Shown in pieces: positions 8,628-44,227 of a DNA stretch of 64,000 nucleotides. Origin of the DNA: Perna viridis (lineage: Eukaryota); NCBI GenBank assembly GCA_037379345.1, contig CM074513.1, forward strand, positions 26,412,001-26,476,000, in the 5' to 3' direction. Each line of letters opens with the position of its first letter. Positions within the stretch are counted from its first letter, which is position 1. The translations under genes and the position numbers were made by a program. The notes under the pieces were generated by a model, which searched no databases, was not told the origin of the DNA, and was given only the letters and a program-made list of their open reading frames with translations.

Positions 8628-11600
8628 CTATGAGGCTGATGCCTGGAAGTTGAATCCTCCTCCAACATACTGAGATGCATCAACTCGTGATGGATTTAAT
8701 CCAGCATGACCTGCCTGCATTAATGCCTGTTCTCTTTCTCTGAAGAGCAAAAAAGAATTCAATAAGATAATTAGTAATATTTAATCTTAAAGTAATATTT
8801 TACTGGTAATTCTTCATTATCTTTATTGATGTTGTTAACAGTAGGTAATGCATTTTTATATTCTACAGTTAAATTTCAATAGAGTCTAAAACAAAACATC
8901 CTAATATGATACATCTGATGCAGGCATGTTGCAATAGCATGTTAGATAACATGCTGCATAAATACATCAGAGCGGTAAATCCTTCAAACAAGTTTACAGC
9001 ATAGAAAAGTTTGCAATATATATGATTGGTATTTTCTGTATTAGTCAGATCTATGATGTACATATGTATACACTGCTTAAATCCATACACTACTCGTACA
9101 AATAAGTTTAACATGCAGGACATACATGTCACATCTATACACAATATGCCTATCTAAGCTTCCAAAGCAGCACATATATATAACTGATCCACATGCTACA
9201 CATAAAATGGAAGATTCACACATGCTGCACATATACCAAATTGCACAAAAATGGCATATTATACATGCTGCACATACAATCTAAATCCACTCACTGTAGG
9301 TGCATATCAGATTCACATGTGCATCTACATGTCAAATTTACATTGAAGTACACAATTCTTTTAAAAAGAAATCTAAAAATCTAAAATGAATGTACCCAGA
9401 ACTTATGATATGAAAGTTTGCTTGATGATTATTACACAATGTACACTTTTGACATATTGCACTGACTAAATTATCACATTCAAAGCATAAGTTCTATATG
9501 ATACAATAACATACAGTTCCTATACTTCCAAAACTGATAAAGTTTAACAATTCAAGAGGTGTACTTTCTTTACATCCAGGCACCTAAACACTTACTTTGC
9601 TCTCTGTTCTTTTTTCTTCTGTAAAATGTATTTTTTCTTCACTTCATTTAATTCTCTATCAATTCTTTCTATTTCATATTTATATTCAGTGACTTGGGAC
9701 TCATACATCTGCAGTTCCTGACCCATGGCCTGGAAAACAGATGAATCATTTATCAAAACTGACATCACATTAGATTAAGCAAGATAGTTAATTATTCAAT
9801 GAACTGATACTTGAAATGATTATGATTTCATTTTATTTTATGTTTAAAACAATTCTTTTTTTGAAAATAAATTGTAGCTTCAACTATATGCATATGGATC
9901 TGTCATTAAACCTACTTACTACTGCCAGTATAGTTTCACAACCTTTTTTTTAGTTTGAAATGATTTTACTCAAAAATGCTGTATACATTTTGAGAGCTTA
10001 GCACCTTTGGCCTTTTATCCATATCTTAAAAGTTTATATAATAAATACTCAATAGATTCCAGTGTCATGAAACCAATCTAACTGAACTGACCCGTATCTG
10101 TTTATTTTTCTCCTTCAGCGTTGATGTATAAACCTGTAACTGTTCTGCCACTTCAGGACCAGGCTGTCTAGCAAGCACATGGTTCAATTCAATGTAAAGT
10201 TTTTCTTTCTCCTGTATTAACATTTCTTTTTCTTCCACTTCTTCATTTTTACCAATCAATCGTTTTTGTAAAGCATGGATTTTCTGTATATGTTCATATG
10301 TGCTTGGGTCACTTCCCTAGATTATAAAATTAATATTTATTAGATTTTAATGCCAGAATTTTTACTGTTTTAGAGTAAAAGCATAGTAGAGTATACCAGA
10401 ATATTCTTATTTAAGTTTATCCCTCCCCTTTTGAAGTATTTATAAAATCTCAAACTAAATTTATAATGCTTTCTTGCATTTTCGTTTTGCAATACAGTAT
10501 GTTTCCTTAATTAGTTTTGAATCAAGAAAAGCCTCAATGTAAATGTTCCACGTGGAGAGTTACAACTAATGTGATAAGAGCCCAGTTGCAATTTTTAAAG
10601 CAACTGAATTACAGTTTTCATAATAAGCTGCCAGTGTGACTGAATTATGAAAGCATTATTTGAACCCATGCATCTATCTTTTTACTACATTACCTCAAGT
10701 TTTCTCCATCTATGAATATTCATGGGATTTTCTAACTCCTCCTCAAGAGCAGTACATCTGGTTCTTTCTTTAAGTAATTCTCTTTGAATGTTATAAGTTT
10801 CCATTCTGAAATAAATATATCATGTTTAATGATTTGCAAGAATATCTATTTACTGAGAACTATAAAGATAAAATTAATTTATTAAACCTCAAAATTTCCA
10901 TTATTTTCATGTTATTAGTTAAGTAAATTACATAACACTACTTTCCAAATAATATTTAGCTATCTGAACAATGGATTTAAACATCTTGGTCTACAGTCTT
11001 CAATTCTGAATAGGTAATGAAAACAATTCACAGGAATAACTGTAACAGAAGACATAAGATTTTTTCTAAGAATTGAATGGAGTTATTAGATTTGAATGCT
11101 CTTTTCTCTTTTTCCATTTAAATCTTCACCCTATACCTGAGCTCATCAATATTGGCTACTTTTTTCTCTAGCACAGCTTTTTGTCCCCTAAGTTTACGAA
11201 ACTGAGATTTCAGTAGCCCAATATCCCCCCGTCCTCATGTTGTATTGAGTTTCTCCTTTATTTAAATCTTCACCCTTTACCTGAGCTCATCAATATTGAC
11301 TACTTTTTTCTCTAGCACAGCTTTTTGTCCCCATACTTTACAAATCTGAGATTTCAGTAGCCCAATATCCCCTGTCCTCATGTTGTATTGAGTTTCTCCT
11401 TCATTTAAATCTTCACCCTTTACCTGAGCTCATCAATATTGGCTACTTTTTTCTCCAGGACAGCTTTTTGTCCCCTAAGTTTACGAATCTCCGATTTCAG
11501 TAGTCCTATATCCCCGGTCCTCATATTGTATTGAGTTTCTCCTTTATTTAACATGGATCTTTGGATCTTTATCTTCTCATAAAGTTGCCTTAGCTCATCC

Positions 11601-14600
11601 TTACTTCTAACAAACTGAGTTCCAATTATATCTCTTTCACTGATCACCTACAAATATGTAGTTAGCTTCAATAAAATGTGATCATGTCCAGCTATGATAA
11701 AAGTTTTCTACAAATATTTGTGCATGATTTCTTTAAAAATTGAGAAAATCTGTACATATCACTTAGCAACAGTCCATAATTAATTAATTCCAATTGTTTT
11801 TAGTTTATTAACGTCTAAGACATTTCAATATATTTGGATTCACGGAGAAAGTTTTATATAACTACAATATGAGCTTGTTTAACTTTTATCATCATAATTC
11901 AAGACAAGGGCTAGTATACCACTAATCATAATGATAGAAACCAAGAAACCAGTTTAAATTTTCAAGAATTAATTAAACTTTCAAAAATAATGGAGACTAC
12001 AAATGACATTATTATAATAACCAGATTTTTATAAAATAAGGAAGAGTTTTTTAAGTTACCTGGTCAAGCTCTTTCTTTTGTCTGATTCTCTCCGCGTCAG
12101 CTTCAGCGATGATCTTCAACAACTTTCTCTCTTCTGTCTCCTGAGCAGCAATGAAAGCTTTACACTCACGAGCCTGTTCTTTTCTCTTCTTCAAATCATC
12201 ACGTAATGATTCCTTGTCTTTCTCTACCTTTTTGTTGTCAAAATAAGACTTAATTAAGGAATTCTCTTTGGACTGGATATCCTCCTTCAGCTGACTGATC
12301 AGATGGTACATGTTCTTCAGTTTCTTTGCCATTTCTTGAATCTCTGCCTGTTCAAAGAAAATTGATTTGATGTTGATGGTCAAACAGGGAGATATACTGC
12401 TTATTCCTAATGCATAAGTTCATGCAAGCTAATGAGCAAATAATAATAGTCTTTCTGTTGTTCTAAAATACTGTGAGTTCACATATTCACACAAAACAGT
12501 TAAAAAATTGTGCAAAGAACTACACAGTTGAAGGTTAAATGTCACTCATTTTATGTGATTAGAACTTTGTAACATCACAATAAAATAATTTCTTTCTTAG
12601 ACAGAAGTAATTTCTTGGATGTTTTATGTATCATAACAAAACTTAAGTGTAGATATAGCACTGTTTACTTTCATTCCTACATATTAGAAAAGCATTGTTA
12701 AACTAACCTGAGATTCTATGAGGTTCTTACTATAAACATTTCTATCACTTCTGACAGCCTCATATAAGTTCTGTTGTTGTTTAAGCTTGGTTTCAGCTTC
12801 AGCAATCTTCTTTTTCAGCTCAAAAATCTTCATTTCCTTCTTTTTCACTTCTTCCATGTCGTTCAGAACCTATTTAGAAATTTGAAAATATAAAAAAAAA
12901 AATATAAATTGTATAAAAAATGTACAATTTCAACTAATTTAAAATGTACATTGACTTTTTTTTCTCTTTATTTTTTTTTCCAACTGACATTTCATATTTC
13001 GTATTAAAAACATATTAATAAAACTGAAAAAGATGAAATTGCAAATACAATATTAATGATCCATTTAATGCATATTTACAAATATAGAACTGTTCATAAA
13101 ATCATTAACATTTGTAACATTTGTTTGTTCGTTTGTTTGTTTTTTTTTAATTTTTATTTGCTCAAAGAACAAACCGGATAGGAGACAGGTTATTCCGACT
13201 TACGTGGTCTCCTCCCCTTCAATACAATTTGTCACAACCACTTCAATATAAGCACAGTAGCATGCATCAATTGAACAATCATTTCAAACAACATTTACAG
13301 TCAAAACATTTCTCCTTCTCAATATCAACTTGGCATCAATTTCAATTTACCTGATGTGTGAAATCACTGGCTTTCTGAATGTACTGGTCTCTTTCCTTCT
13401 CAAGTTGGTATATAATTTTTCTCTGCTTTTTGGCTTCTTCCCTAAAGTTTTCAATTTCTTGCTGAAGATGTTTCTTTGAGTTCTCATGGAACTTGACAAG
13501 TTCTTCTTGTTTTCTGGTTGCAGTTTCTGCTTTCATTGCATTCTGAAAGAAAAATATTTAAGTAGAGGTCTTTTTAAGAATCATAAAAATTCTGTAATAT
13601 GTGATACATCCCCAAAAAGGCTACACATTTCAGGGGTCTATATGATGAAATATATAATCATTCATTCCAATCTGTCTGTTCTTAATTAATTCACATGGGA
13701 TATTCAATAGTTTCAATTGTATTTCAGTGTCATTTACATAGTTATCTCCCTTAAATTTTAATTGTATAGTGCATTCTTTATAATTTTATATCTCCTATGA
13801 ACAGGGGTTATATGAAATTTTTGTTTACTTTTACATTTAAACAATATACTAGTATCAAAAATAAAAATATGAATTGCATATTGCATGATTCTCAACTGGA
13901 GTACTACTTAAAGCGTAAGTCATGACAACAAGAATCTACAATAGATCTTTTTCCTGATGTAAAGTTCTGATAATTGTTGTCTTCATCATCAAGTTAGTCA
14001 CTCTCTCCCTCAATTTCAAGATAATAATAACACCTTAGAAAAATGGATTTTCTTCAGGTTTTAGAAGTTAATGAAAAAAAATTGACAACAACAACCTACT
14101 AAAGATTTATTACTTAGCTTTTGCAAAGAAATTAAAGTCCATTCTATAATTTGAAAATTAATGTATACCTTTTTGAAAATGTCCCTATTTCTGGTAAGTT
14201 GTTCAATGTCTTTCTTGTCTTGCTCAGCTTTTTTGTATGCTTCATTCAGTTCTGTGGAGAAAAGTTAAAAGAAAAAATTCAGATAACAAATTTAATGTAT
14301 TTAAACTTTTAAACTTACATTCAATAAAAAACAAAACCACATATCATACCGATAACATCTTAGGAAAAGGGTAGATTTTTTAAAGGTTTTTGATGTTCAT
14401 GGAAAAATTATCTGTCCTGTGCTGTAAATTATGTTAATGTTTTCAGAAGCCTTGATATATTATGGGGCATTGTGATATAAGATGATTATTAAAAGAAATA
14501 TTTCCTGGACCACAGTAAAATTAAATTTTGAAAATTCTTGACGTACGGTTTTGATAATGGTTGTTTTCATCTTTAAGTTTATCTCTCTCTCCCTCAATCT

Positions 14601-17600
14601 CTGCCTTTCTTGATTCAACCTCTCTGATCTTTTTCTGTATTCCTTCTCTCAGTTTGTTTACATGTTGTGTTTCTTTCTTTAGATGGTCCACCTCATTTTC
14701 CTTTTGCTGTAAAAAAAGTAGCAAATATCTGTAATGTTTTACAATAACTTGCATAAAAATTTTTAAATGTACATGTACAATGATTTTGGATGTTGTTGTA
14801 GAATTGTTAAACTATGAAATGGAGCAAAGTTGATTAAAACACAATGGGCTACATCGATGAATTATCCAAAGACATGATATGATACTACCTATTTTGAAGT
14901 GATATGACCCTTTTTCCCCTTTTGGTTGCACTATACAAATGTGATTTAGGTGCACTGTTTAAAAAGATAATGCATTGTTACATATCATCCTTTGCATCAA
15001 CAATTGATGTATACCAGTCTTCAAGCAAATCTCTCAGGCTTGATATAGAAGTTGTGTTGATACTCAAGCCAATTTAGGAAAATGCATTACATTAATCTAT
15101 AATTATAAAATAATATTACATACATGTATTAAACAATTTTAGTCATAAGGGTAACATATCATAGAATCAATATATCATGAAGACAAAACTGTATTCCATC
15201 TGGTGATGCTGTGACTTTTGCTTGTCATTTAATAATCATATCCTACCTTTAACTCATTGACTCTAGATGTGTTTTCAGAAGCTAGTTGTTCAGTAACTAG
15301 AGACAGCTGTTCAAACTCTTGCTGAAGTTTGTGTGACCTGCTGGTAAGGACTTCATAATCCTTTTTTGATCTTTCATTCAGAACCTTAAAATTAAATTAT
15401 GTTAAGTTTTTATATATAAAACCAGCAATCAAGTCTTGATACAAGATTTTCCATGATCAGGTTTTCAACGATATGGGGGCATTTTTATTTTGTTACAGGA
15501 ACTGGGAAGTCTGAAATCTCAAAAGAACCTAATTGAGACTATTTCTGCCCTGCGTGGTATGGAAAAACAGAGGTATACATTTATGTGCAGTTCATTACAT
15601 GTACCCCTTTAAAATGATTCACCTTTGTTAATACCTTATTCATTTGTTTTATTCATCAGTTAAACATACCCTGAGATCTTTTGATTTCTGTTCAAGTTTG
15701 GCAATATCTTCCTTGTAAGCAGAAATCATTTCTTCAATAGATTTACACTCATTTGTTCTTGTTTCCAAGCAAAGTTTGGCATCCCTTAACATCCTTTCTA
15801 CTTTATCTTTCTTCCTCCTCTCTTCTTCAGCATCCTTATTCTTTTCAGTTATATCTTTTTTAAGCTGTAAATCAATAAAGTTTGCAAAGCATTATGTCTG
15901 AAACATATATCATGAACAAATTTTAAATTCTTACAAAGTATTCAATAAATGTGACCAATGTACTGCGACAAAACTAAAATATCTATATGAAATATGGATC
16001 ATCCTGCCATTAAAAATCCTATGTGCAGACATTTGTAACAAGAATTGAACCCTTTTTCTTCATATTGAAAGGTATGAATGATATTTTTAGGGGTTAATAA
16101 AATTGGGTTTACAATGCGATTTTGAACATTCAGAGGCTAGTAAAACTATGATGATATATCAATATACCTGTATTGTATCTTTATCCAATTATAGACTGGG
16201 TCAAGAGTTAAAAATAAATAATAAAGAGTGGATGCAAAGCCCTACACATAATTTTACAGAGCACTTTCTTCTTTCACAGCTAAATTTACTTCATAAATCT
16301 ACCTCTGCTATTTTCTCTTCAGTTTTTGCTCTCTCTTGGTCTAGCTTGTGTTGTTCAGAAAAGGCTTGAGCCAGATGTTCCCTTAGTTTGACAATCTCCT
16401 GAAGTTGTACATCTCTCTCCTTTGTCAGTTCTTCTTTGGTTTTTAACAGCTCATTCACACTACGACAATTAAAATTTTTAAGAACTAGAAACTTTGAATA
16501 ACAAAGAAAACAATATTGTCATCCATTGTTTCAATTGGAGTTATCCATCATTACAGTTGTTGCATTTATCAGTAAGTTAATATTAGTAAAAAAAAATGCT
16601 TAAGAAAGCATAACTGTGACCTTCTTTGTGGTGTCGTTACATCACTTTTAGTTTGATTTTGAAGAATTATCATCATTCTGATTTTATTACTTTGTTGTTG
16701 GGGCCTTTCAAAGCTTATTTAATGATGTGTGATTACATTTGTTGAAGACCTATCGGGAACCTCTGAAAGTGTTTACTATTTTGGATTTAGGTTATATGCT
16801 ACAGTGCATTTGTTGCATTTCGCCATCTCCATTCTTTTTTCCAGTCACTCAAGCTTTAATCTGTGTTATTCAATTTCAAATCAACAAACACAAACTTACT
16901 ACACTGAAAGGAGAATTTTTATTTTTGTGCTGTAGTTGTAGTTTTACCTTTTCTCTTGACCAATTGAAAGCCCAGCTCCATGTTCAATAGCTTTGGTAAG
17001 GTTATTAATGTCCTTCTTTAGAGTAGTAATCTTTTCTCGTGTTTGTCTTTCCTTTTCCCTGGCATTCACTTCATTCTCAGTTGCTTGGGCTTTTTCCTAA
17101 AAGTAAAAGTAAATTGAGTTTTTTTTTGTGCTAAAAAGACAGTGGTAATCTATTAAGTGTCATTGTCCAAAACAATAAATATGAAAAAAGTGACATTTGA
17201 TCAGAAATTCTTTATAAGTAAGGACATAAATAAAAAAAAACTCAAAGAGAGGATAACTGTAGCTGATGAAGATAGTAACTAGTCCTGTTAATTTCCAATG
17301 TTCCTTCTTAGAGTTCCAATGTTTGAACATGACATTAACAAGTGTACTTACTTCCTTTAATTCAGCAATTGTCTGTTGATCATCATGAGATAATTTCTGT
17401 GATGTCTGAACTTTTGCTCTGTTTGCAACAGTCTCTGCATTCAGTTCTCGACATTTTCCCATCAATCTTTTTTCTTCTTCATGAGATTTTTTCAAAGCTT
17501 GGTAAAGCTTTTCATACTCTGACCGAAACTTTTCAAGGCTTCTGTCTCCAGAAAGCTGGGATAGGACCTATCGAACGTATGCGAATGTATAGAAAATGAA

Positions 17601-20221: not shown

Positions 20222-20292
20222 CACCATTTTTCGCCTCTTGTGTGGCTATTTTGATCAAAACATTGGCATCTGTCTGTGTGTCACCATTTTTT

Positions 20293-20307
20293 GTTGTCAT
20301 TGACAAC
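20293..20307 (-). promoter_or_regulatory. RFX X-box-like element for minus-strand CFAP58
   Basis: Perfect inverted repeat GTTGTC-ATT-GACAAC, 71 nt upstream of the ATG at 20221. RFX X-boxes typify ciliary gene promoters. Confidence 0.65.
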
Positions 20308-20694
20308 GTGATAGGAGTACTGTCCCGACCATTTATTCGAATTACAAGTACTTTATCATTTAGCAATGTTATCCGCTAAATATTTTGAGAAAAAAATCTT
20401 CTTAAAACATGTTAAGTGTGTTTTATTAATATTGGTATTTTATTGATGATTTTAATTATTTACTCTGAACTGACAGTGCTTTGTGGTATACGAATACGGG
20501 ATCGAATTGCGCGACATTATTAAAAGGTTTATTTTGCTTTCGAATTTTGGAAATAACTTTCTTGAAATACTTGTAGCCTATATAATATGCGATATAAATC
20601 TTTCATCTTTTGAAAAATATTTTTTAATGTTAGATTTATAGTAGAATTTTGTTTATTGTTGCGAAAATTATTTATTCGAAACTGATATTATTTT

Positions 20695-20709
20695 GTTGTC
20701 CTTGGTAAC
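20695..20709 (+). promoter_or_regulatory. RFX X-box-like element for plus-strand CFAP58
   Basis: GTTGTC-CTT-GGTAAC, 69 nt upstream of the ATG at 20779. Confidence 0.7.
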
Positions 20710-20778
20710 AGAGCTGGAGTAAATTTTGATGGATATTATTTCTGCCCGATTTTGAAGTTTTGCTCGATTTAAGACATA

Positions 20779-23700
20779 ATGGCAGAGGTAAAAATGTCAA
20801 TGCGTGTAAATTTCTTACCGCGCTTTCATTTTAGTGTATTAATCTCAAGAGGTTGTTGAGGACTGTCATCATGTTAATGCATGCATGGCATGTCATTATA
20901 GTCTTCTTCTGCTTGTTCGCCATGTCGGTTATGTGATGCTTGCTCATTAGCAGATATTGAAAATATTTGTTCAGTGTCCCAGCTAGTATTTCAAAGGGTG
21001 CCTTGCAGGTCTTGTAAAAGGGCACTTAAGTACACTGTTGAAATTCAATTTGATGAGTTTAATAAGGTATGGTCTAAAATGTGTAACCCGTAGATGTACC
21101 CATACCAACTTTTCCCCATATCCAAATATTTTTTTGCTAAAATATACATTCTTATGGTATGTTCAGAACTGAAAATTGCATGAGTTGTGAAAAGTATGTT
21201 TCAATTCAATTCTCGTCAAGAAAATGATGTATACTTTTCTAATATTTCTTGTTTATTCAGTTATCTGAAGTCAAAAGGTGTAACAACAATTTATTGACTA
21301 TTTCTCACTGTCCTGTCGAATTTAACGTTTTTCTAAAATCATTAAGAGGTTAAAATTTCACCCTAAGATTTCAGGTAAAGTTTTGAAAGATTTGATATTA
21401 TTTTAAAAAAAGAAGTGATTGAGTTTGAATTCCGCACCATACCTAGCGTCAATCCCCGTACCAGCAAAGAGTGAATAGGATCTTATCCAGAATGAAAAAC
21501 AAAGTCTCATTAAAAGAGTCTGATTCGATTTTAATTTATGGTCAATGAAAATTTTGTTAATTTATGATGTTCTAATGTCCAATATGCATTGCATTAGTAC
21601 AGAGAACAAAAATACTGGACTTTGATTTTTGGGTACAGGAATTTTGGGTGACACGTTTTAGACCTTTTGAAAACAGAAAATCGAATAAAATCAATTTTAT
21701 CAACAAACATTTTTACAATCATTAATTTCTAGCCTAAACATCATGTCATTTTGTAAATGTGTACCAACTTTTAGCTGGAAATAGCTAGTAATAATGAAGA
21801 AATTGGCAAAATGGTATTTGGGTATGGGGAAAAGTTGGTACAGGTATGGGTTAAACATTTTAGACCGTACCCGAGATTAATCCTCTAGCTGCCAGGTGAA
21901 TATATGTGTCCATCACCGGCTCCCTGCAAAGCGGACATATACATGTATGTCCTTTTTTAATGAAAAATAGCCTGTAACTTTTAATCTCCTTCTACCTATG
22001 TTATCGATTCATTAAGGTGTAATAAAATGCACATATGAATATTGGAATATATAAAGTATATAAACATGATGACATAATTTCGTTAATGACATCATGAACA
22101 CTGACTTCACAAATTAGTAAGGAAGTGGTGTGACTCCTGTCATGCTGGGTTACATGTATGTGTTAGACATTCACAGAGAACGATATTTTAAGGATTGAGA
22201 ACAGAACTTCATTGGTAAATGAATAAGACTTCCACCTACTTCCAGTTTTATTTTTTTTCACCTTGTTACTGCTGGAAATATTTCTAAGTTTTTAATGTCT
22301 GTAACAGATGTGTGGTCAGTGTTTAAATCAAAATTTGTAGAAACTTGCATTATATGTTCAGTTTTAAGGAAAAGAAATGCACATCGAATAATATTCGAAC
22401 TGATAGTCATTATGGAAATAGGGACAATTTTACCTCTTGTGAACAAAATTTGATATAAATCTGATAAAGGGTGAGTGTACACAACATTTTTCAATTTATC
22501 AGTATTAATTGATGTCACACTTGTTCCGAAATTGTGGAAATATGTCAAACAATTGTGACGTATGTGACATCGTTAAAAAATTTGATTCTGGCAGCAAGGG
22601 GGTTAAATCATTTCAAATCACTAAAATTAGGTTCTGTCGATTAGAGCTCAGTTACAGGTTACTTACATTCAATCAGCAGTCTACGTTAATCATCAAGATA
22701 AACGGGTAGAATATATTGCAATGTGCACCCATCATTTATAAAGAGGAAAATGAGAAAATGAATACATGTAAGCAATTTTGAAAAAGGGCACATGGCATCA
22801 CTTTAAAAATGGTGGGTTTACTACCCTGTAAAAAAGGCCTACCAGAAATACTGGTGTATGTCACTTGTAAATATAGGATCCAATGCATTTTAGCTATTAA
22901 ATTACAGAATGGTTGAAAAGTAATATTGTATTTACAATATGAAAGTAGAACACATTTCAGTCAAAATTCAAAATTTGCAAGAGTTCAGGAAGCCCTTTTT
23001 GCTAAGACTTTTATCTAATCTGAAGTTTATGCTAGGGATCAAGATGACCAAGCAAAAAAAATGTTAACCTCTTAAGTATTACCATGTGTGACTTAACATG
23101 TATCACAATTTTTCTACTACAAAGTTTTAATCTAACTGACATGGCATATGTATGAACATTGTCTGATTGCTCTTGATATTAAGAAAAAAAATCATCTGTC
23201 AATCCAAATTAGATCCATGCACAATATAATTAACACATGCAGTTATCTTTCCTAATTTTGATATAAGTTAAAAAGCAATTTTAGGATATGAGAGTGGTTG
23301 AAAGATTCATGCTAACAGAATTAAAGAAAGAATAATAATTAAAAAATACATTTTTTGTACTTGCTACAATGTAAAAATTACCCCTGTTCTTTATTTTTTT
23401 GCATTTTGTTGAAAATGTTAATTGTCATGACATCAGAGTATTGACCAACTGTATTTTACATTGTATGTATATGTTTTTCAGGAAAAGGGAGGTAAATCCT
23501 CTATTGATGACAGTGCATTTGAGTCTCTTGAGAAAGATTTTCAAGATGTAAGTATTCAGCTAAATATAGCATGGATTGACTTTCAAAAGACAGGTTAAAA
23601 GTAATAGAATTTATTAGGTGAGCTATTTAAGTTTGATCCAAAATACTCCATATGCATGTACACATGTAAATGTACAGTATTCTCAAAAATATAGCATGTA

Positions 23701-26700
23701 CAACTGCTTGTAAATAAACACTTAAAAGGATGTATTAACATGGGACGTCAAAACTTTTCTGAATGGGATACCATAACTAAACTCCATAAAAATATAAGAT
23801 AATGTATCAAGTCTGTAATTTTATGTGTGAAGTTAAATACATGTAGAATAAATTTTAAAATCCTCATCATCTATGTAATAATTTTTCTACAGGTCCTCAA
23901 CCAACTTACAGGGAGTGATGGCATGGAAAAGTTCAGAGAGCAGTTTGAAAAATTACACAAAGCTCTGAAAAAATCTCATGATGGAGAAAAAAGGTTGATG
24001 CAGAAATGCCGTGAACTGAATGCTGAAATTGTAGCCAATTCTGCCAAAGTAGCAACTGCTTTGAAACTATCTCAAGATGATCAGCATACTATTACAGAAC
24101 TCAAGAAGGTGACAAGATTGTTGGTTAATTATATACTCATTTAACAGTTAATTGCAATACTTCATTTAAGTTATGTTGATTATTATGAATGTGGAAACAA
24201 TTGAGATTAGTGAAAATTGAATAGTGTTTTTCACCACAACTCTTTTAATGATCGTTAATACTAAAGCATGTAGGAATTTTAAGCAATTAGTTTTCATAGA
24301 TACCATTATTTTGATTTCCTTCTGTAGGAATTGGATAGAGTATGGAAAATGGCGGATCAAGCAAATGAGAAAGAAACTAGGGCCAGGGAAACAATCCAAG
24401 ACTTAAGATTGGAAGTGATCAATCTGAGTAAGCTGGTGGAGCAAGGTGCTAATTTAACCATGGGACAAGAACATAGGTAATTCTGAATTACTTTAGATTG
24501 TGAATCAGGCAATAAGAACACACAAATTTTTTCTTGTATTTACAATTAATTACAAATATTCGGGCCAATTTTCTTATAAAATGCATAATGGTAACTATCA
24601 AGCCCTGTAATGGGCAGAATAGAAGTATACAGTATGGCTGATGCTTGGAAGTCAAAATGGAAAATATGCATATATTTATACTACACCCAAAAAACAGTTT
24701 CTAATATATGATGTTACTTGATACTATTTTTAAATTCATTTCACAGTGTCAATGGCTTACTGAAAATTAAAGAAGATTTAACTAAGGAGAGAGAGGAACA
24801 TTTGAAAGAAATAGCAAAGTTACAAGAAGCTTTAGAAAACTCTAGTGCTAGTCAATCTAAATTGGATGCTGAAAAAAGTAAACTGGATGAGAAAATACAA
24901 GAGGTAAATAAAACAAGTACTATCTTTAAAAAAGGATAGCCGACTCATATTCTAGCTTCGTTATTACAAAAATCTGATTAAGATTTTATTTGGTGAACTG
25001 GGGGATCACAGTACTATGTATTTTATTGGTTCATTAAGTAAACTATTTCCAATTATTCAATGTATAAAAGGTTATTCAGTTTATAAAAGTGATTGAAAAT
25101 ATTCTGTACAGCAATGCCCCAAATGGGCCTTAAATTTCACGGTTGCTATTACATTTGTCCAATGAAAGCTATATTGGTTAGGTTGTCATGGTTAAGCATC
25201 ATGAGTTTACTTAATGAACCAACCAGATTTAAATATGTATGTGTAAACTATATCAATTGTTTTATCAAAATATATTTTTTTTAGCTGACTCAAGACATCC
25301 AAATAAAAAATAATGATGCCCAGAGAGAGGCACGAAAGAAAGAAAAGATGGAAAGAGAGCTTAAACAAACAAAAGCAGAATTAGATGCAAAGAATACAGA
25401 GATCAAAACAATGAAAACCACAGCAGATAGAAACTCACAAGACTTATCAAAATTGGAATCACAGCTCAAAGAACAGAAGGTTTGTCTTTACTTAATATGT
25501 GATAATATTTACAAACTGTGTGCAACTGGCAGAGGAGAGTGTGACTAACCTTAGGAGCATACAATACCAGCTTGATAAAATCATGTCCACATTGTCAGGG
25601 GTCCAATTCCACCAGTAGCCTTGGAACCCCAGTCAAATAATGTCCAAATTATAATATCCAAGGCTGGAAAAAGATTTGGTCCTTGCATGTAAAACAGGTT
25701 TGATACTGGTTGCACTATATATAAGGTAAAGGCAGGAGTTATTGCATTTTTCTATTGTGAAAAATGGGAATGGATTGTTGTCACAATAGTTCAGACTCGT
25801 TATATATATCTTTAGCAATATTGAATCTAAATATTTTTTTCAATATCTTAAATACAAAGAATTTGCCTAAAGTGACAAAATTGCAATAATGTATGTTCAC
25901 AATTATTTCTGTATTTATATTAAAAATGTTCTTAATAAAGTGTAAGGGTGTAAGGTATACTTGCATAGTTTTTTACTTACCATATTTGATATTTATATAA
26001 ACCTTTTTTTAGGGCTCACATTTACCAATTTGTTATTTATTCATATTTTATTTGTTTTTATTTCCTTTTTTAACTTTTAAACGTGTCTGTTGTTCACAAT
26101 TTCATTCTTACCTATTTTTTTTCAGTTCCTTTTTTACCTTTTAAATGTGGCTATAGTTCACAAATTCATTATTCATACCTTTATAAATAGCTGATGTCTG
26201 AAAGAGCTATTAAAGATGCTGACATGCAGACCACAAGATTACAGAAGCTGCAACAGGATTATGAAAACCAATTACAAAACTTTGAACAGCTGAATTCTGA
26301 ATTCCAGTCAAGACAAACTGAACTCAAGGTGTGACCATTAGTGAAATTTTAGTTTGTTTGTTGTTTTTTTTTTTTTTTTTTGCAGAAAGGTTAAGATATG
26401 TTAAAATGTATTGTAATTATGATTAATTGGAAATTGAATTTTGCTATTTTAACCATGAACCATTGATTAATAAAAATTCATAATTTTCTGTGGATACTGG
26501 AAAACAGAAAACATTCTTGATACAGTACAACTGTAACAATGGAGGTTTCTTTCAGCCACATATAAGAAAAGATGAATCATTTTGAGAAAGTGGTTTTAAA
26601 AGAGATATTTACTCTTCATAATGTTGTTAGGTAAAGGGGGATAACTCAACTACAAAAAGTAATTTACTCAGTTTAATATGGCTACAATATAATCTATATA

Positions 26701-29700
26701 TTGTGGACTCATGAAAATTGAGCTTGACATTTTTTTTTAGATTTTCATTAAATATAGGAACAAGCCTAGTAAAAAAAGAAGATAAATATAATGAATTAAG
26801 TCCACAAAGAGTTGAAAGCATATTCTATATAGTTCTATCTTCAGTCATAATTTCAGTTTAACTAACTTCAATTTTACAGCAAAAAGATGATGAGATCAAC
26901 CAACTGAAGAAAGAGACAACAAGATTGAACAAAGTAAGGGAGACAATCCAGCGAAGACTCAGACAGGTTGAAGATTTGAAAGGAGAAGTAGAACAACAGA
27001 AAGAAACACTAAAAAGTCAGAACTTAGCTTTGGAAAGAGGTTAGTGTGATGAAATATGTATGTGATAAGAAGAATTAAAACAATTAATATTTCTTTTCAT
27101 TTGCTTGTTGGTTTTTTAACAATAAAAACCATTCTGCTGTTTACTGAAAAAGAAATGTTTGTCCAATACCTGTCAAAGATATCAGTGATCAATGAATTTT
27201 TCACATTCTATCATTGGGACCCTATCCATTTCTTATGAATAATGTGAGACTGTATTGATTCACTATTAGATGAATAAAAAATCTACATTGATTAATTATT
27301 AAATCTGTTCAAATTTTTTATCGATTGAAATTCTGTTCCTGAATGTAGTAAATTATGTTTTATTCAAATTACTTTTTTTCTAAACAGACCTTGATGCTAC
27401 CATAAAGAAGGTTGATGGTGGAAAGAAAGAAAATCAAGACATTCAGAAGAAATTTGAGACAGAGAAAAAGGTAGCTCACATGTATATACATTTGGCCAAA
27501 AGAATGTATTGCTCGTAACATTAGGATTCATATAATAAATGAAAAAAAAAACATTTGTATGTGAAATTTCATTATACATGACCTGTTTATGCACCATCAA
27601 ATCAGTTTTCTTTGCTAGAATTTTTGATCGACAACATATTTGTCCAGTGTAGCAGACATGTTTTTCAATAGACTGTCAGCATTCCAATGGGGAAAAATGT
27701 TCTCTGCTACTCAGTGACCCATTTCTTTACTCTTATGAGGTAGACTTTAAAGCTGATTTGATAAAAAAGCAGGAACATGGTTCAGCCAGATCCTTTGATC
27801 TCATTTTCCCCTATATAGATGATGTATTGTCTTTAAATAGTCCCAGTTTCAGATATTTTATACCCCAAAGTACTTTAGATAAAGGACACTACAGACAGTA
27901 TGAAGTCAGCTTCATATCTTGACCTACTTTAAGAGATCAATAGAAAAGGAAAACTCATGACTAAACTATACAACAAACATGATGACATCTCAATCAGTAT
28001 TGTCAGGTTTTTTTTTATCCACCTGATCGACTTTCTCTGGTATATAAAGATATACATGTAGTAGTTACGTATTTGGCTTTGTCATTGTGAGGCATATTTT
28101 GTCAAGAAATGTTGACATGTTGAAATTTTATTCCTCCTTTTCAAGCATTTACTCCATTTAGATAGTAAATGACATTTTTGTGTATTTTACAGTCATCAGA
28201 GAAAATGAAGAATGAGTTTCAGAAAAGGTTTGAAGAAATGGCTGCTGATATTAACAAGTTCAAAAAAGCAGAGTCTGATATTGAAAACTACAAAGATGAA
28301 GCTCAGAAACAAAGAAAGATCATTTACCAGCTTGAGAAAGAAAGAGACAGGTACATCAATGAAGCCAGTGATCTCACTCAGAAGGTAAGTTTTGTAGTTT
28401 TCTACAGTGTTACAAGAAAAAAACTAATTTCTGCATATTTCATGATACATATTTGTATAGTTATATAATATATATCCTTATAGGATGTCATTTTTATGTT
28501 TTCTATCAGAATTTTAATACAGAGTTACTTTTGTTTGAAAAAGTACATTGTTTTGAATAAAACTGTAAAAGTTTACAATATATGAGTGCATTTATAAGTT
28601 TAAGGTAAAAGGGAGATAACTTATTTTTTCATAAGAATTCTGGTAATAAATTCCTAAACATACATAGAAGAGTTTATTTGTAAGACATGAATTAAGTCTC
28701 TAGACTTGTACATTGATGAAAACTCGCAATCACTGTCCATAAAAATTTATAAAAAATTGTTCTGATTATCTCCCTGTATGTGTAGGTTTTGGAACACATG
28801 GAGTTGGTAAAGACAAAGGAAATGAAGATTTTTGAGTACAAGAAGAAAATTGCTGAAGCAGAGACTAGATTAAGACAACAACAGAACTTGTACGAGGCTG
28901 TCAGAAGTGATCGTAACTTGTACAGCAAAAACTTGATTGAATCACAGGTGAGTTGATTTTCTAAAATAAATTGTGTATCTTTCTCACAACAGTATAGAAA
29001 GGTTAAATATGGAATTTGTGAAATGACTTTTAGCCTATAATATCTCACTTTTACATGAATAATTGTCCAAGTAACTGGCATGCACAACTTAACTGGATGT
29101 TTGAAGGATCTCACATTTAACAATTTAAAAGTCTCAAGCCCACAAGAGCAATAGTGATATTGCAATGGGTTAATCTGATTAAGTATAATACTGTGGCCTT
29201 ATAAAACATTTTTTTTTGGTCCTTAGACTGTCTCCTTCAATTTAATAGGGCACTTCTAATTAATAATGTAAATTGTAAAAAAAAATAATTTATAGGGAGT
29301 ACAATTTTTTTAAAATACATCCTTCTTTCACTGTTTTCAATAAATAATTACTAAGAACAAAGTAAATGATTTTAATACCGAAGTCAAAATTATTAAGAAT
29401 CATTTTACATCTTTATTATCAAATAGAATAAGGATATACTTTGAAGTGATTTCTTGAATATAAATTTGTTTCTGACTACAGGATGAAATTACTGAGATGA
29501 AGAAGAAACTGAAAAACATGAACCATTTGATAGATCAACTGAAAGAAGATATCCAGAACAAAGAAAATGCAATAGTCCAAGCTGCAATCAATGCCAAGAA
29601 ACTGGAGAAAGACAAAGACATCCTGAAATCTGATAGGGACAAGAGTAGACAACAAGTCTTGGAAAGCAAGGATGTCATCAACAACCAAGCTGCTGAAGAG

Positions 29701-31672
29701 AAGAAACTGTTGAAAATCATTGCTGAGGCCGATGCTGAAAGAGTCCGTCAGAAGAAAGAATTAGAACAGGTGATCAGTGAAAGAGATATTCTTGGTACAC
29801 AACTTGTGAGGCGTAATGATGAGTTGGCCCTGCTTTATGAAAAGATCAAGATTCAGCAGTCTACCCTAAACAAGGGAGAAATTCAGTACAATCAGCGTCT
29901 GGAAGATATTAGAGTTCTGAAACTGGAGATCAGAAAATTGAGAAGAGCTAATAATATCCTTAACAAGAGTGTGGCTAATGTTGGAGATCTCAGGTAAGAG
30001 CTGATGTTAATAAACAGTTGTTTTTAAATAAAAAGGAATCCCTGAACCCCTTTTTGTTGCTTTAAGTCCATAATTCTAAAACAAAAATCCAAAATGAACC
30101 TCTTCAAGTGTGGACAAACATTATTCTAAAAATTCATACAAATCCATTGAAGCTTTGTTGAATTATCATATGTTTTTATGTTTTCTTTTTCTTTTCTTTA
30201 AAAATGCATCTGAATTAATAATTATTTTTTGGTTTTTAGGCGTGAAGTGTACCATATCCAGAGAGAGCTGCTGAGAGAAAGGACTAGATGTAAAGCATTG
30301 GAAGAAGAATTAGAAAACCCAATGAACATTCACAGATGGAGGAAACTGGAGGTAATTTTGAAAAATGAAAAACAAACATTAATATTTAAGAAAATTGAAG
30401 AAAACACCTCTTGTCAATTTTATTTACAGTTTTGATATAACCCTTCTGGTCCCAGTTTTTCAACTTGTTAACCAAAAGATAATGTGTATGAAATTTCTTT
30501 ATCTATTTTATAAAAAAAATAGGTGCAGTAATTAATCATAAAACAATAAACTTATATTTTAAAATTTTACAGGGTAGTGACCCAAGCCAGTACGAGATGA
30601 TCCAGAAGATCCACACTCTCCAGAAACGTCTCATCTCCAAGACAGAGGAAGTAGTGGAAAAGGAGCTACTTATCCAGGAGAAAGAGAAATTATATTTAGA
30701 ACTAAAACACATCCTGGCCAGACAACCAGGGCCTGAAGTTGGAGAACAGCTACAGATATACCAACAAACACTCAAGGAAAAAACCAAACAGATGAAGGTA
30801 GAATATATTACATACGATGTCCGTTTGTTGACTTTTGTTTGTACAGAATTTGTAAATGATGGCATCAAAAAGTATTATAGAATGCCTTTCCTTGTTTGAC
30901 TTCAATTACAGATATTTATCTCTCACTGGATTCTTGTTACAAGATTGAAGTAATAACTTATTTTCTCATATTCATCATTTTTTCTTCACTTCTTAAGCAA
31001 TGGTTTTTTTACGTTATTTTCAGTCCATGGCATCCGAACTGAACATGTATGAGTCCCAGGTCAGTGAATACAAGTATGAGATAGAGAGAATAGCCAGGGA
31101 ACTTCAAGAAGTCAAAAAGAAATATTTCGTCCAGAAAAAGAAAGAACAACAAACAAAGTATGTATTTGTATTGAAATAATATGTGTGATTTCATATACAA
31201 ACAATTATTTTGTATTTTATATAAGTACAAGTTTCCAAAATTGAGAAATGAAAGCAGTATAATATTGTGTTAAATTTTTAAAGTCTATATAGTTTGTTAT
31301 TGACAAGATTTCTTTCAATTTCACCTTAAAACAAAAAAAGTTTTACATACCCATAAATTTCAAGCAGAAATCTAAAAAATAAAAAAATAGCAAAATCTTA
31401 ATGATATTGCAACATTAACTGATATAACTGATTTTAATTACCATCAAACTTGCAACAACATAAGATGAATAAATAATACTTCTGGAGAAAAGAGTTTCAC
31501 AAAAAATCTGTTGCTTTTATAATTTGCAAAGCATGGTGTTATTCTGTTTTTCAGGGAAAGAGAGCGGACCCTAGCACAAGCAGGAGCACCAGTTATACAG
31601 CCTCAACGTACAGATGGGCCACGGTTCACTGGAGGGGGCTTTAACTTAAAGTCATCGAAAGGGGCAGCATAG
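20779..31672 (+). CDS. CFAP58: Cilia- and flagella-associated protein 58 (CCDC147), conserved copy, 16 exons, about 875 aa
   Basis: Exons: 20779-20787, 23482-23547, 23893-24108, 24328-24476, 24747-24903, 25285-25479, 26191-26328, 26880-27039, 27388-27470, 28193-28384, 28786-28947, 29482-29993, 30240-30351, 30573-30797, 31024-31157, 31555-31672. Sum 2628 nt. N-terminus MAEEKGGK..SAFE, plus ERDILGTQLVRRNDELALLYEKIKIQQS, HRWRKLE and C-terminal GPRFTGGGF. AATAAA at 31958 and 32112. Confidence 0.96.
21065..21872. mobile_element. Non-autonomous DNA transposon with long imperfect TIRs (possibly Mutator-like)
   Basis: Left end GGTATGGTCTAAAATGT...ACCAACTTTTCCCCATATCCAAATA is the inverse of right end TATTTGGGTATGGGGAAAAGTTGGT...ACATTTTAGACCGTACC. 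Flanks GAGTTTAA and GAGATTAA resemble an imperfect TSD. Confidence 0.75.
21881..22602. mobile_element. piggyBac-type non-autonomous element with TTAA TSD
   Basis: TTAA|TCCTCTAGCTGCCAG ... CTGGCAGCAAGGGGG|TTAA. The 15-bp TIR matches at 12/15 positions; TTAA at 21877-21880 and 22603-22606. Confidence 0.7.
27600..28010 (+). mobile_element. Decayed Penelope-like element reverse transcriptase fragment in a CFAP58 intron
   Basis: Translates with stops and frameshifts to EFLIDNIFVQ...IPMG...FLYSYE...YIDDVLSLN...IKDTTDS..SASYLDL...TKLYNKHDD (RT motifs B, C, D, E). Confidence 0.85.

Positions 31673-38052: not shown

Positions 38053-44227
<6,175 letters not shown>

What the first reader, a model, noticed from the sequence alone, without database searches (positions are those of the whole stretch)
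8628..31672. Head-to-head pair of intact, deeply diverged CFAP58 paralogues
Seen: both copies are full length (about 878 and 875 aa) with matching internal exon lengths (216, 149, 157, 195, 138, 160, 83, 192, 162, 512 or 288+224, 112, 225, 134). Introns show no evident similarity and proteins differ substantially, so this is an old retained inverted duplication, not an assembly artefact. Established: CFAP58 is an axonemal coiled-coil partner of CCDC146/MBO2, needed for sperm flagella and single-copy in human. Inference: two interchangeable subunits for different axoneme types (for example sperm versus gill or larval cilia) or different doublets.
Basis: partly seen in the sequence, partly recalled or inferred. 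Interest (0 to 1): 0.75.

Follow-up and report, generated by a model that had tools for sequence, protein, structure and literature searches.

The report
Mussel-specific head-to-head CFAP58 gene pair
Mussels carry two neighbouring copies, pointing away from a shared start region, of a gene for a cilia scaffold protein; both copies are intact and switched on, so mussels are a natural test of how such duplicates shape cilia.

Summary
Two intact CFAP58 genes lie head to head: the plus gene at 20704-31672 (16 exons, 875 aa) and the minus gene at 8628-20298 (17 exons, 880 aa, or 878 from the second ATG).

They are the only CFAP58 loci in this 723-Mb genome. Their proteins are 58% identical, and synonymous sites are saturated.

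Spliced contigs of 1.6-3.2 kb for both genes occur in 4 of 4 transcriptome-like runs. Their 5' ends lie about 405 bp apart, and an X-box-like motif sits at each end.

The pair is not ancient. In trees the two types are sisters inside pteriomorph bivalves (98/94 support). Both changed fast after the duplication (stems 0.41 and 1.01 substitutions per site) and have been conserved since: 93% and 90% identity to the Mytilus orthologues.

Five Mytilus species already carry both genes on one contig. RefSeq calls both 'CFAP58-like', with consecutive accession numbers in three species. My paper searches found no description of the pair.

Divergence is reciprocal: each copy keeps ancestral segments that the other has rewritten.

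The function is inferred. Co-expressed paralogues probably sit at different places in one axoneme, or pair with each other, as proposed for Chlamydomonas FAP58/FAP189.

A word search of the scan's notes found nothing on other DNA.

The parts
20704..31672 (+). Plus CFAP58 gene (conservative copy), 16 exons, 875 aa; 3' UTR beyond 31672 not mapped
   Evidence: Exon chain. It is 92.8% identical to the Mytilus plus-type protein P0384.
8628..20298 (-). Minus CFAP58 gene (divergent copy), 17 exons, 880 aa (878 from the second ATG); 3' UTR below 8628 not mapped
   Evidence: Exon chain. It is 94.6% identical to P0310 and 89.6% to the Mytilus minus-type P0350.
20299..20703 (.). Shared divergent promoter region between the 5' ends of the two mRNA contigs (about 405 bp)
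   Evidence: Contig ends lie at 20283-20298 (minus) and 20704-20713 (plus) in 4 of 4 runs. Contig ends are not proven transcription starts.
20293..20307 (.). X-box-like palindrome GTTGTCATTGACAAC at the minus 5' end
   Evidence: The pattern was written after seeing the sites. Its centre lies about 79 nt from ATG 20221.
20695..20709 (+). X-box-like motif GTTGTCCTTGGTAAC at the plus 5' end
   Evidence: Its centre lies about 77 nt from ATG 20779.
20704..20787 (+). Plus exon 1 (5' UTR and ATG GCA GAG, ATG at 20779)
   Evidence: Joint 20785|23480 with GT..AG ends in 4 of 4 runs. Candidate 'MAE|GTAAAAAT'.
23482..23547 (+). Plus exon 2 (66 nt)
23893..24108 (+). Plus exon 3 (216 nt)
24328..24476 (+). 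Plus exon 4 (149 nt)
24747..24903 (+). Plus exon 5 (157 nt)
25285..25479 (+). Plus exon 6 (195 nt)
26191..26328 (+). Plus exon 7 (138 nt)
26880..27039 (+). Plus exon 8 (160 nt)
27388..27470 (+). Plus exon 9 (83 nt), rewritten in this copy
   Evidence: It is 22-33% identical to five reference CFAP58 proteins, against 44-52% for the minus exon.
28193..28384 (+). Plus exon 10 (192 nt)
28786..28947 (+). Plus exon 11 (162 nt)
29482..29993 (+). Plus exon 12 (512 nt; one exon where the minus copy has 288+224)
   Evidence: Pfam CFAP58_CC at 220 bits.
30240..30351 (+). Plus exon 13 (112 nt; holds ALEEELENP)
30573..30797 (+). Plus exon 14 (225 nt)
31024..31157 (+). Plus exon 15 (134 nt)
31555..31672 (+). 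Plus exon 16, coding part up to TAG
20213..20298 (-). Minus exon 1 (5' UTR and ATG GTG ATG TTA GAG, first ATG at 20227)
   Evidence: Joint 18624|20212 (GT..AG on the minus strand) in 4 of 4 runs. Candidate 'MVMLE|GTATTCTA'. P0310 and P0350 start MVML/IE.
18545..18625 (-). Minus exon 2 (81 nt)
17352..17567 (-). Minus exon 3 (216 nt)
16948..17096 (-). Minus exon 4 (149 nt)
16303..16459 (-). Minus exon 5 (157 nt)
15670..15864 (-). Minus exon 6 (195 nt)
15247..15384 (-). Minus exon 7 (138 nt)
14547..14706 (-). Minus exon 8 (160 nt)
14169..14251 (-). Minus exon 9 (83 nt)
13351..13542 (-). Minus exon 10 (192 nt)
12708..12869 (-). Minus exon 11 (162 nt)
12060..12347 (-). Minus exon 12a (288 nt)
   Evidence: Pfam CFAP58_CC at 104 bits.
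11424..11647 (-). Minus exon 12b (224 nt)
   Evidence: Pfam CFAP58_CC at 76.5 bits.
10694..10805 (-). Minus exon 13 (112 nt; holds ALEEELENP)
10092..10316 (-). Minus exon 14 (225 nt)
9596..9729 (-). Minus exon 15 (134 nt)
8628..8739 (-). Minus exon 16, coding part up to TAG

Best explanation
This is a mussel-lineage (Mytilidae) pair of CFAP58 genes, made by a local inverted duplication of the single bivalve CFAP58 gene.

Shown:
- The duplicated unit included the promoter and exon 1.
- Both daughters then changed quickly. The minus copy changed about 2.5 times more than the plus copy.
- The changes are complementary. The plus copy keeps the ancestral C-terminal third but has rewritten exons 9-10. 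The minus copy keeps exons 5, 9 and 10 closer to the ancestor and has changed the rest.
- Since then both have been held by purifying selection, and the two genes have stayed on one contig in Mytilus.
- Both are transcribed outwards, from 5' ends about 405 bp apart, and both mRNAs are in the same samples.

Inferred:
- Each 5' end carries an X-box-like motif, which would suit RFX control as in other cilia genes.
- Each protein is a long coiled coil of the FAP189/FAP58/MBO2 kind. In Chlamydomonas that protein lies on the A-tubule as an L-shaped docking ruler for inner-arm dyneins.
- Because the two are probably made in the same ciliated cells, they most likely occupy different doublets or regions of one axoneme, or form a mixed dimer.
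- A split of one copy for sperm and one for gill is less likely.
For: Identity:
- Pfam CFAP58_CC matches both copies.
- The genome holds only these two loci: 3 exon matches and 7 of 7 PF21771 matches, all in this window.

Intactness: all splice sites are AG/GT and the phases fit.

Expression:
- Spliced contigs of 2721-3104 nt (minus) occur in 4 of 4 runs.
- Plus contigs are 3230-3243 nt in 3 runs and 1598 nt in the fourth.
- Each shows the first-intron joint, in 4 of 4 runs from 4 studies.

Age:
- Careful trees join the plus-type and minus-type with 95/95 support (42 rows) and 98/94 (35 rows). The joint clade sits inside Pteriomorphia (95/88 and 91/87).
- Without the plus row, the minus clade still falls inside bivalves.
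- Holding plus with scallop, pearl oyster and oyster while excluding minus costs 9.94 lnL, p-AU 0.029.
- Stems are 0.41 and 1.01, against 0.01-0.12 for other bivalve end branches.

Constraint:
- Window versus Mytilus identity is 804/866 for plus and 780/871 for minus.
- The minus type keeps 307/369 columns that are invariant in 32 other animals, but matches the majority at only 259/501 variable columns.
- pN is 0.26 against a saturated pS of 0.86.

Reciprocal divergence.

Neighbourhood in Mytilus: both genes lie on the same contig, with consecutive RefSeq numbers in three species.

Promoter:
- Contig ends are about 405 bp apart.
- Two X-box-like sites occur, against 0.27 matches expected.
- The first exons mirror each other as ATG-NNN-GAG|GTA.

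Function of the family: passages read in PMC10266980 and PMC11151096.
Against: - All RNA evidence comes from assembled contigs of runs whose RNA nature the tool only guesses. It shows presence, not level or tissue. Only the first two exons of each gene were laid.
- The tissues of the runs are unknown to me, so co-expression in the same cells is not shown.
- The usual X-box pattern with a 2-base spacer gave 0 matches. The 3-base-spacer pattern was written after seeing the sites.
- The two mussel stems are the longest bivalve branches, so long-branch attraction could inflate their sister support. The AU p of 0.029 is modest, and the group was named after seeing the tree.
- No DNA of orthologues could be fetched, so no dN/dS per branch exists.
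- No structure, partner or localisation was tested.
Confidence: 0.6

Rival explanations
1. One reading: the two proteins are interchangeable subunits used in different axoneme types. One would serve sperm flagella and the other gill or larval cilia.
For: Precedent: the Drosophila Y-linked gene ORY is listed with autosomal paralogues CG6059 and CG5882 and with human CFAP58 as its orthologue (table passage in PMC7824794). The ratio of contig word depths, plus to minus, differs between runs: 2.7, 0.95, 2.1 and 1.35. The tool warns that such depths cannot rank genes.
Against: Both mRNAs are present in 4 of 4 laid runs from 4 studies. The 5' ends lie only about 405 bp apart, with mirrored motifs, an arrangement that usually goes with co-regulation. 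Reciprocal divergence means neither copy equals the ancestral protein, which fits partners better than substitutes.
Confidence: 0.25
2. The duplication is ancient (before bivalves, or before molluscs), and the minus type was lost in every lineage except mussels.
For: The minus copy is about equally far (60-66%) from every other animal's CFAP58. It is only 58% identical to its neighbour.
Against: The trees place it as sister of the mussel plus type, inside pteriomorph bivalves. It stays inside bivalves without the plus row. The AU test disfavours the nearest older placement. No minus-type protein outside Mytilus-like mussels appeared: 3 of the 120 listed hits and 3 of the 40 fragments were minus-type. 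The two genes are adjacent and share every intron position, including the mirrored first exon.
Confidence: 0.06
3. The minus copy is a redundant, slowly decaying duplicate with no role of its own.
For: It is the faster-evolving copy (stem 1.01). It has changed 62 of the 369 columns that are invariant in other animals.
Against: It has 17 exons with intact splice sites and an open frame of 880 codons. Its first intron is spliced in RNA-like contigs. It is 89.6% identical to the Mytilus orthologue. Of 877 columns, 734 are invariant among six minus-type proteins. Its changes avoid invariant columns: 17% of them changed, against 48% of variable columns.
Confidence: 0.03

Closest known systems
[quoted passage not shown] Examples: M. 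trossulus XP_063434532.1 with XP_063434533.1; M. californianus XP_052102029.1 with XP_052102027.1.
   Same: These are orthologues of both window genes, 92.8% (plus) and 89.6% (minus) identical. Both lie on one contig in each species, with consecutive accession numbers in three species.
   Different: They come from another mussel genus. I could not check their orientation or promoter. Database names do not distinguish the two types, and I found no paper that discusses them.
Chlamydomonas FAP58 and FAP189 (with MBO2/CCDC146)
   Same: This is a lineage-specific duplicate of the CFAP58 gene. Going by gene ids, the two algal genes are neighbours (Cre13.g584300 and Cre13.g584400 in the table passage of PMC11151096). 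The authors propose an MBO2/FAP58 heterodimer and a FAP189 homodimer on different doublets or regions (PMC11151096, PMC10266980; passages read).
   Different: The algal pair is about 80% identical; the mussel pair is 58%. The duplications are independent. The algal proteins have cryo-EM and mutant data; the mussel ones have none.
Human and other mammalian CFAP58 (single gene) with its old paralogue CCDC146
   Same: Same family and length, and the same ALEEELENP-type motif as the ALSXXLENP contact to the MIA complex named in PMC10266980. CFAP58 is modelled on bovine sperm doublets (PMC11779644, legend passages).
   Different: A single CFAP58 gene. Here the canonical gene itself has split into two diverged genes.
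Sinanodonta woodiana (freshwater mussel, Unionida) loci ACJMK2_006491 and ACJMK2_006492
   Same: Two CFAP58 genes with consecutive locus tags on one contig. One is conservative (end branch 0.01) and one is fast (0.32).
   Different: A separate duplication. The fast copy groups with unionid CFAP58, not with the mytilid minus type. It is far less diverged, keeping 360/369 invariant columns.
Drosophila ORY (Y-linked) with autosomal CG6059 and CG5882
   Same: The family is listed with human CFAP58 as orthologue and has several paralogues in one animal (table passage in PMC7824794).
   Different: Much more diverged (29% identity to CFAP58 in that table) and dispersed in the genome. I did not test its relation to the mussel genes.

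Membership tests
CFAP58 (Pfam PF21771, CFAP58 central coiled coil) | Match to PF21771 above its curated cut-off of 27 bits | tested here: met
   Plus exon 12 scores 220 bits. Minus exons 12a and 12b score 104 and 76.5 bits. Full-length relatives P0367 and P0310 score 374 and 366 bits.
CFAP58 (Pfam PF21771, CFAP58 central coiled coil) | Colinear, full-length similarity to named CFAP58 orthologues | tested here: met
   The plus copy is 77-79% identical to bivalve CFAP58 and 67-71% to cnidarian. The minus copy is about 65% and 58-62%.
CFAP58 (Pfam PF21771, CFAP58 central coiled coil) | Placement inside the CFAP58 tree at the position expected for the species | tested here: met
   Both types sit inside Pteriomorphia, in a gene tree that otherwise follows the animal phylogeny.
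CFAP58 (Pfam PF21771, CFAP58 central coiled coil) | Conserved ALSXXLENP-type contact motif to the MIA complex (motif taken from a legend in PMC10266980) | tested here: met
   ALEEELENP is present in plus exon 13 and in minus exon 13 of the window. My pattern did not match the relatives' minus-type proteins P0310 and P0350; P0310 reads ...ELQNP.
CFAP58 (Pfam PF21771, CFAP58 central coiled coil) | Location on axonemal doublets and pairing with CCDC146 | not testable with these tools
   No proteomic, structural or complex-prediction tool for two chains was available.
Divergent (head-to-head) gene pair with a shared promoter | Opposite strands, with 5' ends less than 1 kb apart | tested here: met
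   Contig ends lie at 20283-20298 and 20704-20713 in 4 of 4 runs. Contig ends are only a proxy for transcription starts.
Divergent (head-to-head) gene pair with a shared promoter | Correlated expression of the two genes | tested here: inconclusive
   Both are present in 4 of 4 laid runs. Contigs give no levels, and the tissues are unknown.
RFX/X-box-controlled cilia gene | An X-box close to the transcription start | tested here: inconclusive
   The usual 2-base-spacer pattern (recalled) gave 0 matches with up to 1 mismatch, against 2.58 expected. A 3-base-spacer form occurs at both 5' ends and nowhere else in 64 kb: 3 matches against 0.27 expected. That pattern was written after seeing the sites.
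Paralogue-based axonemal asymmetry (FAP58/FAP189 type) | Lineage-specific duplicate of the CFAP58 gene, with both copies retained and expressed | tested here: met
Paralogue-based axonemal asymmetry (FAP58/FAP189 type) | Different distribution of the two proteins among doublets or along the axoneme | not testable with these tools
   This needs cryo-ET, paralogue-specific labelling or proteomics.

The most novel reading that the evidence does not exclude
The two mussel proteins are obligate partners rather than substitutes. Either they form a plus/minus heterodimer, or they form doublet-specific or region-specific dimers. Either way, mussel cilia and flagella would gain a built-in asymmetry of inner-arm dynein docking. 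This would be an animal parallel, evolved independently, to the MBO2/FAP58 versus FAP189 arrangement proposed for Chlamydomonas. Because each copy has rewritten segments that the other keeps ancestral, neither alone could replace the ancestral CFAP58.
Probability: 0.3. Interest if true: 0.65.

Novelty: new member of a known kind. Interest (0 to 1): 0.4.

Why it matters
CFAP58-family coiled coils are thought to act as rulers that decide which inner-arm dyneins dock where on each doublet. The idea that paralogues of such rulers create axonemal asymmetry rests mostly on one alga.

Mussels offer an independent animal case with three advantages:
- Both copies are strongly diverged (58%) yet conserved since the duplication.
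- The divergence is reciprocal.
- Mussel gill cilia and sperm are classic, accessible motility preparations.

For genome annotation, the result means the two 'CFAP58-like' entries in mussel genomes are distinct orthology groups, not alleles or redundant models. The finding is otherwise ordinary in kind: a lineage-specific tandem duplicate of a cilia gene.

Tried and rejected
1. I aligned one full-length homologue with all window exons as separate rows, to use as a search profile (A1). MAFFT stacked the fragments on the C-terminus. The alignment was not used for anything.

2. The usual X-box pattern with a 2-base spacer gave 0 matches.

A metagenome scan with minus exon 12a returned 57 loci. 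None was minus-type: the best full-exon match was 63%, and partial matches reached 83% over 36 residues. So I have no per-branch dN/dS, only protein-level constraint tests and a saturated paralogue comparison.

4. The paper search was badly posed (any 2 of 6 terms) and returned papers without CFAP58. I ignored it and repeated the search properly.

5. I did not use contig depths to rank the two genes, as the tool advises. I report them only as 'same order'.

6. The shares of words held by 17 RNA-like runs (0.14-0.24) are at or above my estimate for the exons of both genes together (about 0.13). Expressed repeats in the introns (bins 17748-18347 and 18948-19347) could add words, so I do not count this as proof.

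7. Three readings were considered and rejected. An assembly artefact is ruled out by saturated synonymous sites and the presence of both types in Mytilus. An ancient duplication is ruled out by the trees. A decaying copy is ruled out by the constraint tests.

8. I did not look for CCDC146 copy number, having no query from a tool. I did not predict structures, because only single chains can be folded here.

9. I did not open supplementary files of PMC11151096 (Tables S4, Figure S4) or the extended data of PMC10266980. They may hold the FAP58/FAP189 alignment and abundance data that bear on the comparison.

Full report
WHAT IS THERE

The window is G000:C3:26412001-26476000 of a 723-Mb assembly in 46 contigs. 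A translated comparison of 22501-32500 with 8001-18500 gives a colinear series of matches on opposite strands, 34-80% identical.

With phases tracked, all 13 of 13 internal exon lengths fit: 216, 149, 157, 195, 138, 160, 83, 192, 162, 512 or 288+224, 112, 225, 134.

Upstream of the 216-nt exon each gene has a short coding exon that starts at a splice acceptor and has no usable ATG before it. These are 23482-23547 in plus and 18625-18545 in minus. So a further 5' exon was expected in each gene.

Pfam's CFAP58 central coiled-coil model matches both copies far above its cut-off. A search of the whole assembly finds no third locus. The plus 512-nt exon gives 3 matches, and the Pfam model gives 7 of 7 matches inside these two genes.

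Summed exon by exon, the proteins are 507/873 = 58% identical. The only length differences are in the first shared coding exon and the last. Nucleotide similarity is confined to exons: 8 exon matches at 67-78%, plus one 41-base match. Synonymous differences are saturated (pS 0.857) while pN is 0.261. This is not an assembly duplicate.

All searches with window sequence were made exon by exon.

EXPRESSION AND 5' ENDS

The run search with 15200-25199 listed 23 runs:
- 17 runs that the tool guesses to be RNA, from 6 studies, held 0.14-0.24 of the sampled words.
- 3 runs of one sample held 0.62-0.81 and are probably the source DNA.
- 3 runs held next to nothing.

I laid four RNA-like runs from four studies on 17548-23547. 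All four are assembled contigs, so they show presence and joints, not levels.

In 4 of 4 runs one contig of 2721-3104 nt covers 20212-20283/20298 and continues at 18624-18543. It skips 1587 bases whose ends read GT..AG on the minus strand.

In 4 of 4 runs another contig covers 20704/20713-20785 and continues at 23480-23547. It skips 2694 bases with GT..AG ends. This contig is 3230, 3243 and 3237 nt in three runs and 1598 nt in the fourth.

These joints fix the first exons:
- Plus: 20704-20787, reading ATG GCA GAG|gt, which gives 875 aa.
- Minus: 20298-20213, reading ATG GTG ATG TTA GAG|gt.

Seven of the eight contig lengths fit full-length mRNAs, but only their first 141-169 bases lay inside my stretch. 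Word depths of the two contigs are of the same order: 76, 76, 45, 31 for minus against 206, 73, 93, 42 for plus. The tool warns against ranking by them.

THE PROMOTER

The two contig 5' ends lie about 405 bp apart. At each end there is an X-box-like site with a 3-base spacer: GTTGTCATTGACAAC at 20293-20307 and GTTGTCCTTGGTAAC at 20695-20709.

These are the only matches to that pattern in 64 kb: 3 matches counting both strands of the palindrome, against 0.27 expected, and 0 of 100 shuffles reached 3. I wrote that pattern after seeing the sites. The usual 2-base-spacer consensus, which I recalled, gave nothing. RFX control is therefore an inference.

Each site's centre lies 77-79 nt from its ATG, and the two first exons end in mirrored ATG-NNN-GAG|GTA. 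So the duplicated unit included the promoter and exon 1.

WHO ELSE HAS IT

A full-library search with the plus 512-nt exon gave 1608 proteins at E up to 0.001, with the best 150 listed. Of the 40 full-length proteins among them, 36 scored higher on the plus copy. The nearest was a cephalopod CFAP58, and a search with it brought named CFAP58 proteins from many phyla.

Identity to those proteins:
- The plus copy is 77-79% identical to bivalve CFAP58 (Argopecten, Ruditapes, Sinanodonta, Solemya), about 75% to gastropod, chiton and brachiopod, 72-73% to echinoderm, and 67-71% to cnidarian and 70-71% to amphioxus.
- The minus copy is about 65% identical to all molluscs and 58-62% to cnidarians.

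A search with minus exon 12a (12060-12347) found 40 fragments, of which only 3 are of the minus type at 86-92%. One of their clusters holds a full-length 879-aa protein from a 2767-nt Logan contig, P0310. It is 94.6% identical to the window's minus exons.

A search with P0310 listed 120 of 870 hits. Three are minus-type, all from Mytilus (trossulus, coruscus, edulis; 85-89%). The next hits are ordinary CFAP58 at 65% or less.

[quoted passage not shown] The plus type is likewise annotated in Mytilus.

Within each species the two types lie on the same contig:
- M. trossulus, on contig 96324366: ...532 next to ...533/534.
- M. californianus: ...027/028 next to ...029.
- M. galloprovincialis: ...818/819 next to ...820, and VDI21120 next to VDI21121/21122.
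- M. coruscus and M. edulis: both types lie on one contig in each species.

Two points here are my inference: that consecutive numbers mean neighbouring genes, and which species two of the four accessions sharing one sequence belong to. I could not see orientation.

The pair is thus conserved and already annotated in Mytilus. Four paper searches found no description of it. This is negative evidence from the held library only.

WHEN IT AROSE

Trees were built from database proteins only, under a site-heterogeneous model.

With 42 rows, the gene tree follows animal phylogeny. The plus-type row and the six minus-type rows are sisters (ultrafast bootstrap 95, SH-aLRT 95), inside Pteriomorphia next to scallop, pearl oyster and oyster (95/88).

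With 35 rows, three of them plus-type and four minus-type, support is 98/94. The stems are 0.41 (plus) and 1.01 (minus) after a shared stem of 0.08. Other bivalve end branches are 0.01-0.12 and the crown branches of both types are 0.1 or less.

Long-branch attraction is the obvious worry, since these are the two longest bivalve branches. I applied these controls:
- Without the plus row, the minus clade still lands inside bivalves.
- Holding plus with the other pteriomorphs and excluding minus costs 9.94 log-likelihood units, p-AU 0.029. The group was named after the tree was seen.
- At 5 of the 54 canonical-invariant columns changed in all minus-type rows, the plus type shares the minus residue.
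- The genes are adjacent and share every intron position.

An exon-level tree of the 512-nt exon region also paired plus with minus exon 12a (97, quick method). Minus exon 12b was unresolved.

I conclude that the duplication happened in the mussel lineage after it left the other sampled pteriomorphs, and before the window's species split from Mytilus. I cannot date it more finely. Logan rows carry no names, and I saw no deep-branching mytilids by name.

CONSTRAINT AND PATTERN OF CHANGE

Since the split from Mytilus, the plus protein differs at 62/866 positions and the minus protein at 91/871.

Of 873 well-filled alignment columns, 369 are invariant in 32 CFAP58 proteins from cnidarians to bivalves. 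The figures below come:

| Protein | Invariant columns kept | Variable columns matching the majority |
|---|---|---|
| Plus type | 332/369 (90%) | 66% |
| Minus type | 307/369 (83%) | 52% |
| Scallop | not computed | 86% |

The minus type's changes thus avoid invariant columns: 17% changed, against 48% of variable columns. Of 877 columns, 734 are identical among six minus-type proteins. That is the signature of purifying selection after a burst, not of decay.

Of the 54 invariant columns changed in all minus-type rows, 45 are fixed to a single residue.

The divergence is reciprocal:
- Of the 37 invariant columns changed in the plus type, 22 lie in columns 353-616 and none in 617-880. The minus type keeps the ancestral residue in 24 of the 37.
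- Of the 54 changed in all minus-type rows, the plus type keeps the ancestral residue in 42.
- Exon by exon against five reference species, the minus copy is the closer one in exons 5, 9 and 10. For exon 9 the figures are 44-52% against 22-33%.
- The plus copy is far closer in exons 2, 4, 6, 8 and 12b-16.

HOW IT PROBABLY WORKS

These points come from passages I read:
- It contacts the MIA complex through a conserved ALSXXLENP stretch and carries inner dynein arm b.
- Its paralogues are proposed to be distributed unevenly so as to create axonemal asymmetry (PMC10266980).
- FAP58, about 80% identical to FAP189, is proposed to pair with MBO2/CCDC146 on some doublets, and FAP189 with itself on others (PMC11151096).
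- CFAP58 is modelled on bovine sperm doublets (PMC11779644).

Both window copies keep ALEEELENP.

Three facts lead to my reading: the shared promoter region, the presence of both mRNAs in every run laid, and the reciprocal divergence. From these I infer that the two mussel proteins are made together. They would then divide the ancestral role within one axoneme, by sitting on different doublets or regions, or by pairing with each other.

Drosophila offers a loose precedent in the Y-linked ORY (PMC7824794, table passage).

That human CFAP58 defects cause sperm flagellar malformation is recalled. It is reflected only in titles in the listing.

VERDICT

It is a real, expressed, conserved, lineage-specific paralogue pair of a known family. 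It is already present in public annotation but was not described in the papers I could search.

Its kind has a precedent in the literature (FAP58/FAP189). A second case, seen here only in annotation and my trees, is the unionid pair in Sinanodonta, which the trees show to be a separate duplication. Interest is moderate. The reciprocal divergence and the mirrored promoter make it a good natural test of the paralogue-asymmetry idea.

Noticed in passing
window 11115-11551: There is a tandem repeat of period 143, 3.0 copies, 91% matches. The 3' part of minus exon 12b, with its splice donor, is triplicated into the following intron. The extra copies read as exon-like ORF pieces. Because 143 is not a multiple of 3, including a copy would shift the frame. 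The relative's mRNA-derived protein P0310 shows no such insert.
   Followed up: partly
window 29482-29993 versus 12060-12347 and 11424-11647: The plus copy has one 512-nt exon where the minus copy has 288+224. Many ORF fragments of other species' CFAP58 genes stop or start exactly at that point. The intron therefore looks ancestral, and the window's plus gene has lost it. Some relatives' fragments span the point on long genomic contigs, so the loss may be shared by part of the mussels.
   Followed up: partly
window 17748-18347 and 18948-19347 (introns 2 and 1 of the minus gene): These bins reach summed contig word depths of thousands to 100,000 in all four RNA-like runs. They show many partial contigs at 95-99% identity and many irregular joints. 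They look like members of abundant, expressed repeat families rather than part of the gene.
   Followed up: no
window 38053-38367 and 43859-44227, plus strand: An ORF holds a homeodomain (Pfam PF00046, E 3.8e-21). From memory its sequence looks like an NK3/bagpipe-type homeobox. An upstream ORF with an FSIDSIL-like motif may be its first exon. It is the next gene downstream of the plus CFAP58 gene.
   Followed up: partly
database proteins P0243/P0358/P0398 (Sinanodonta woodiana): This freshwater mussel has CFAP58 genes with consecutive locus tags (006491 and 006492). A second pair, with near-identical or identical products, lies on the same contig: KAL3864718.1 and KAL3864719.1, the latter tagged 006376. 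One copy of each pair is fast-evolving (branch 0.32 against 0.01). In my trees the duplication is separate from the mytilid one.
   Followed up: partly
database proteins P0385-P0387, P0397 (Mytilus): The 90% cluster of the Mytilus plus-type CFAP58 also holds piggyBac-derived proteins of 576-578 aa and a 1440-aa M. edulis model named CFAP58. The 1440-aa model is probably a fused gene model that drew the transposase proteins into the cluster.
   Followed up: no
database proteins P0350 versus P0376 (Mytilus trossulus minus type): The annotated isoform X2 (845 aa) differs from X1 (883 aa) only by lacking the last 38 residues, which correspond to the last coding exon.
   Followed up: partly
trees: Octopus CFAP58 sits on a very long stem (1.3 substitutions per site). 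It keeps 314/367 invariant columns. So it is about as diverged as the mussel minus type.
   Followed up: no
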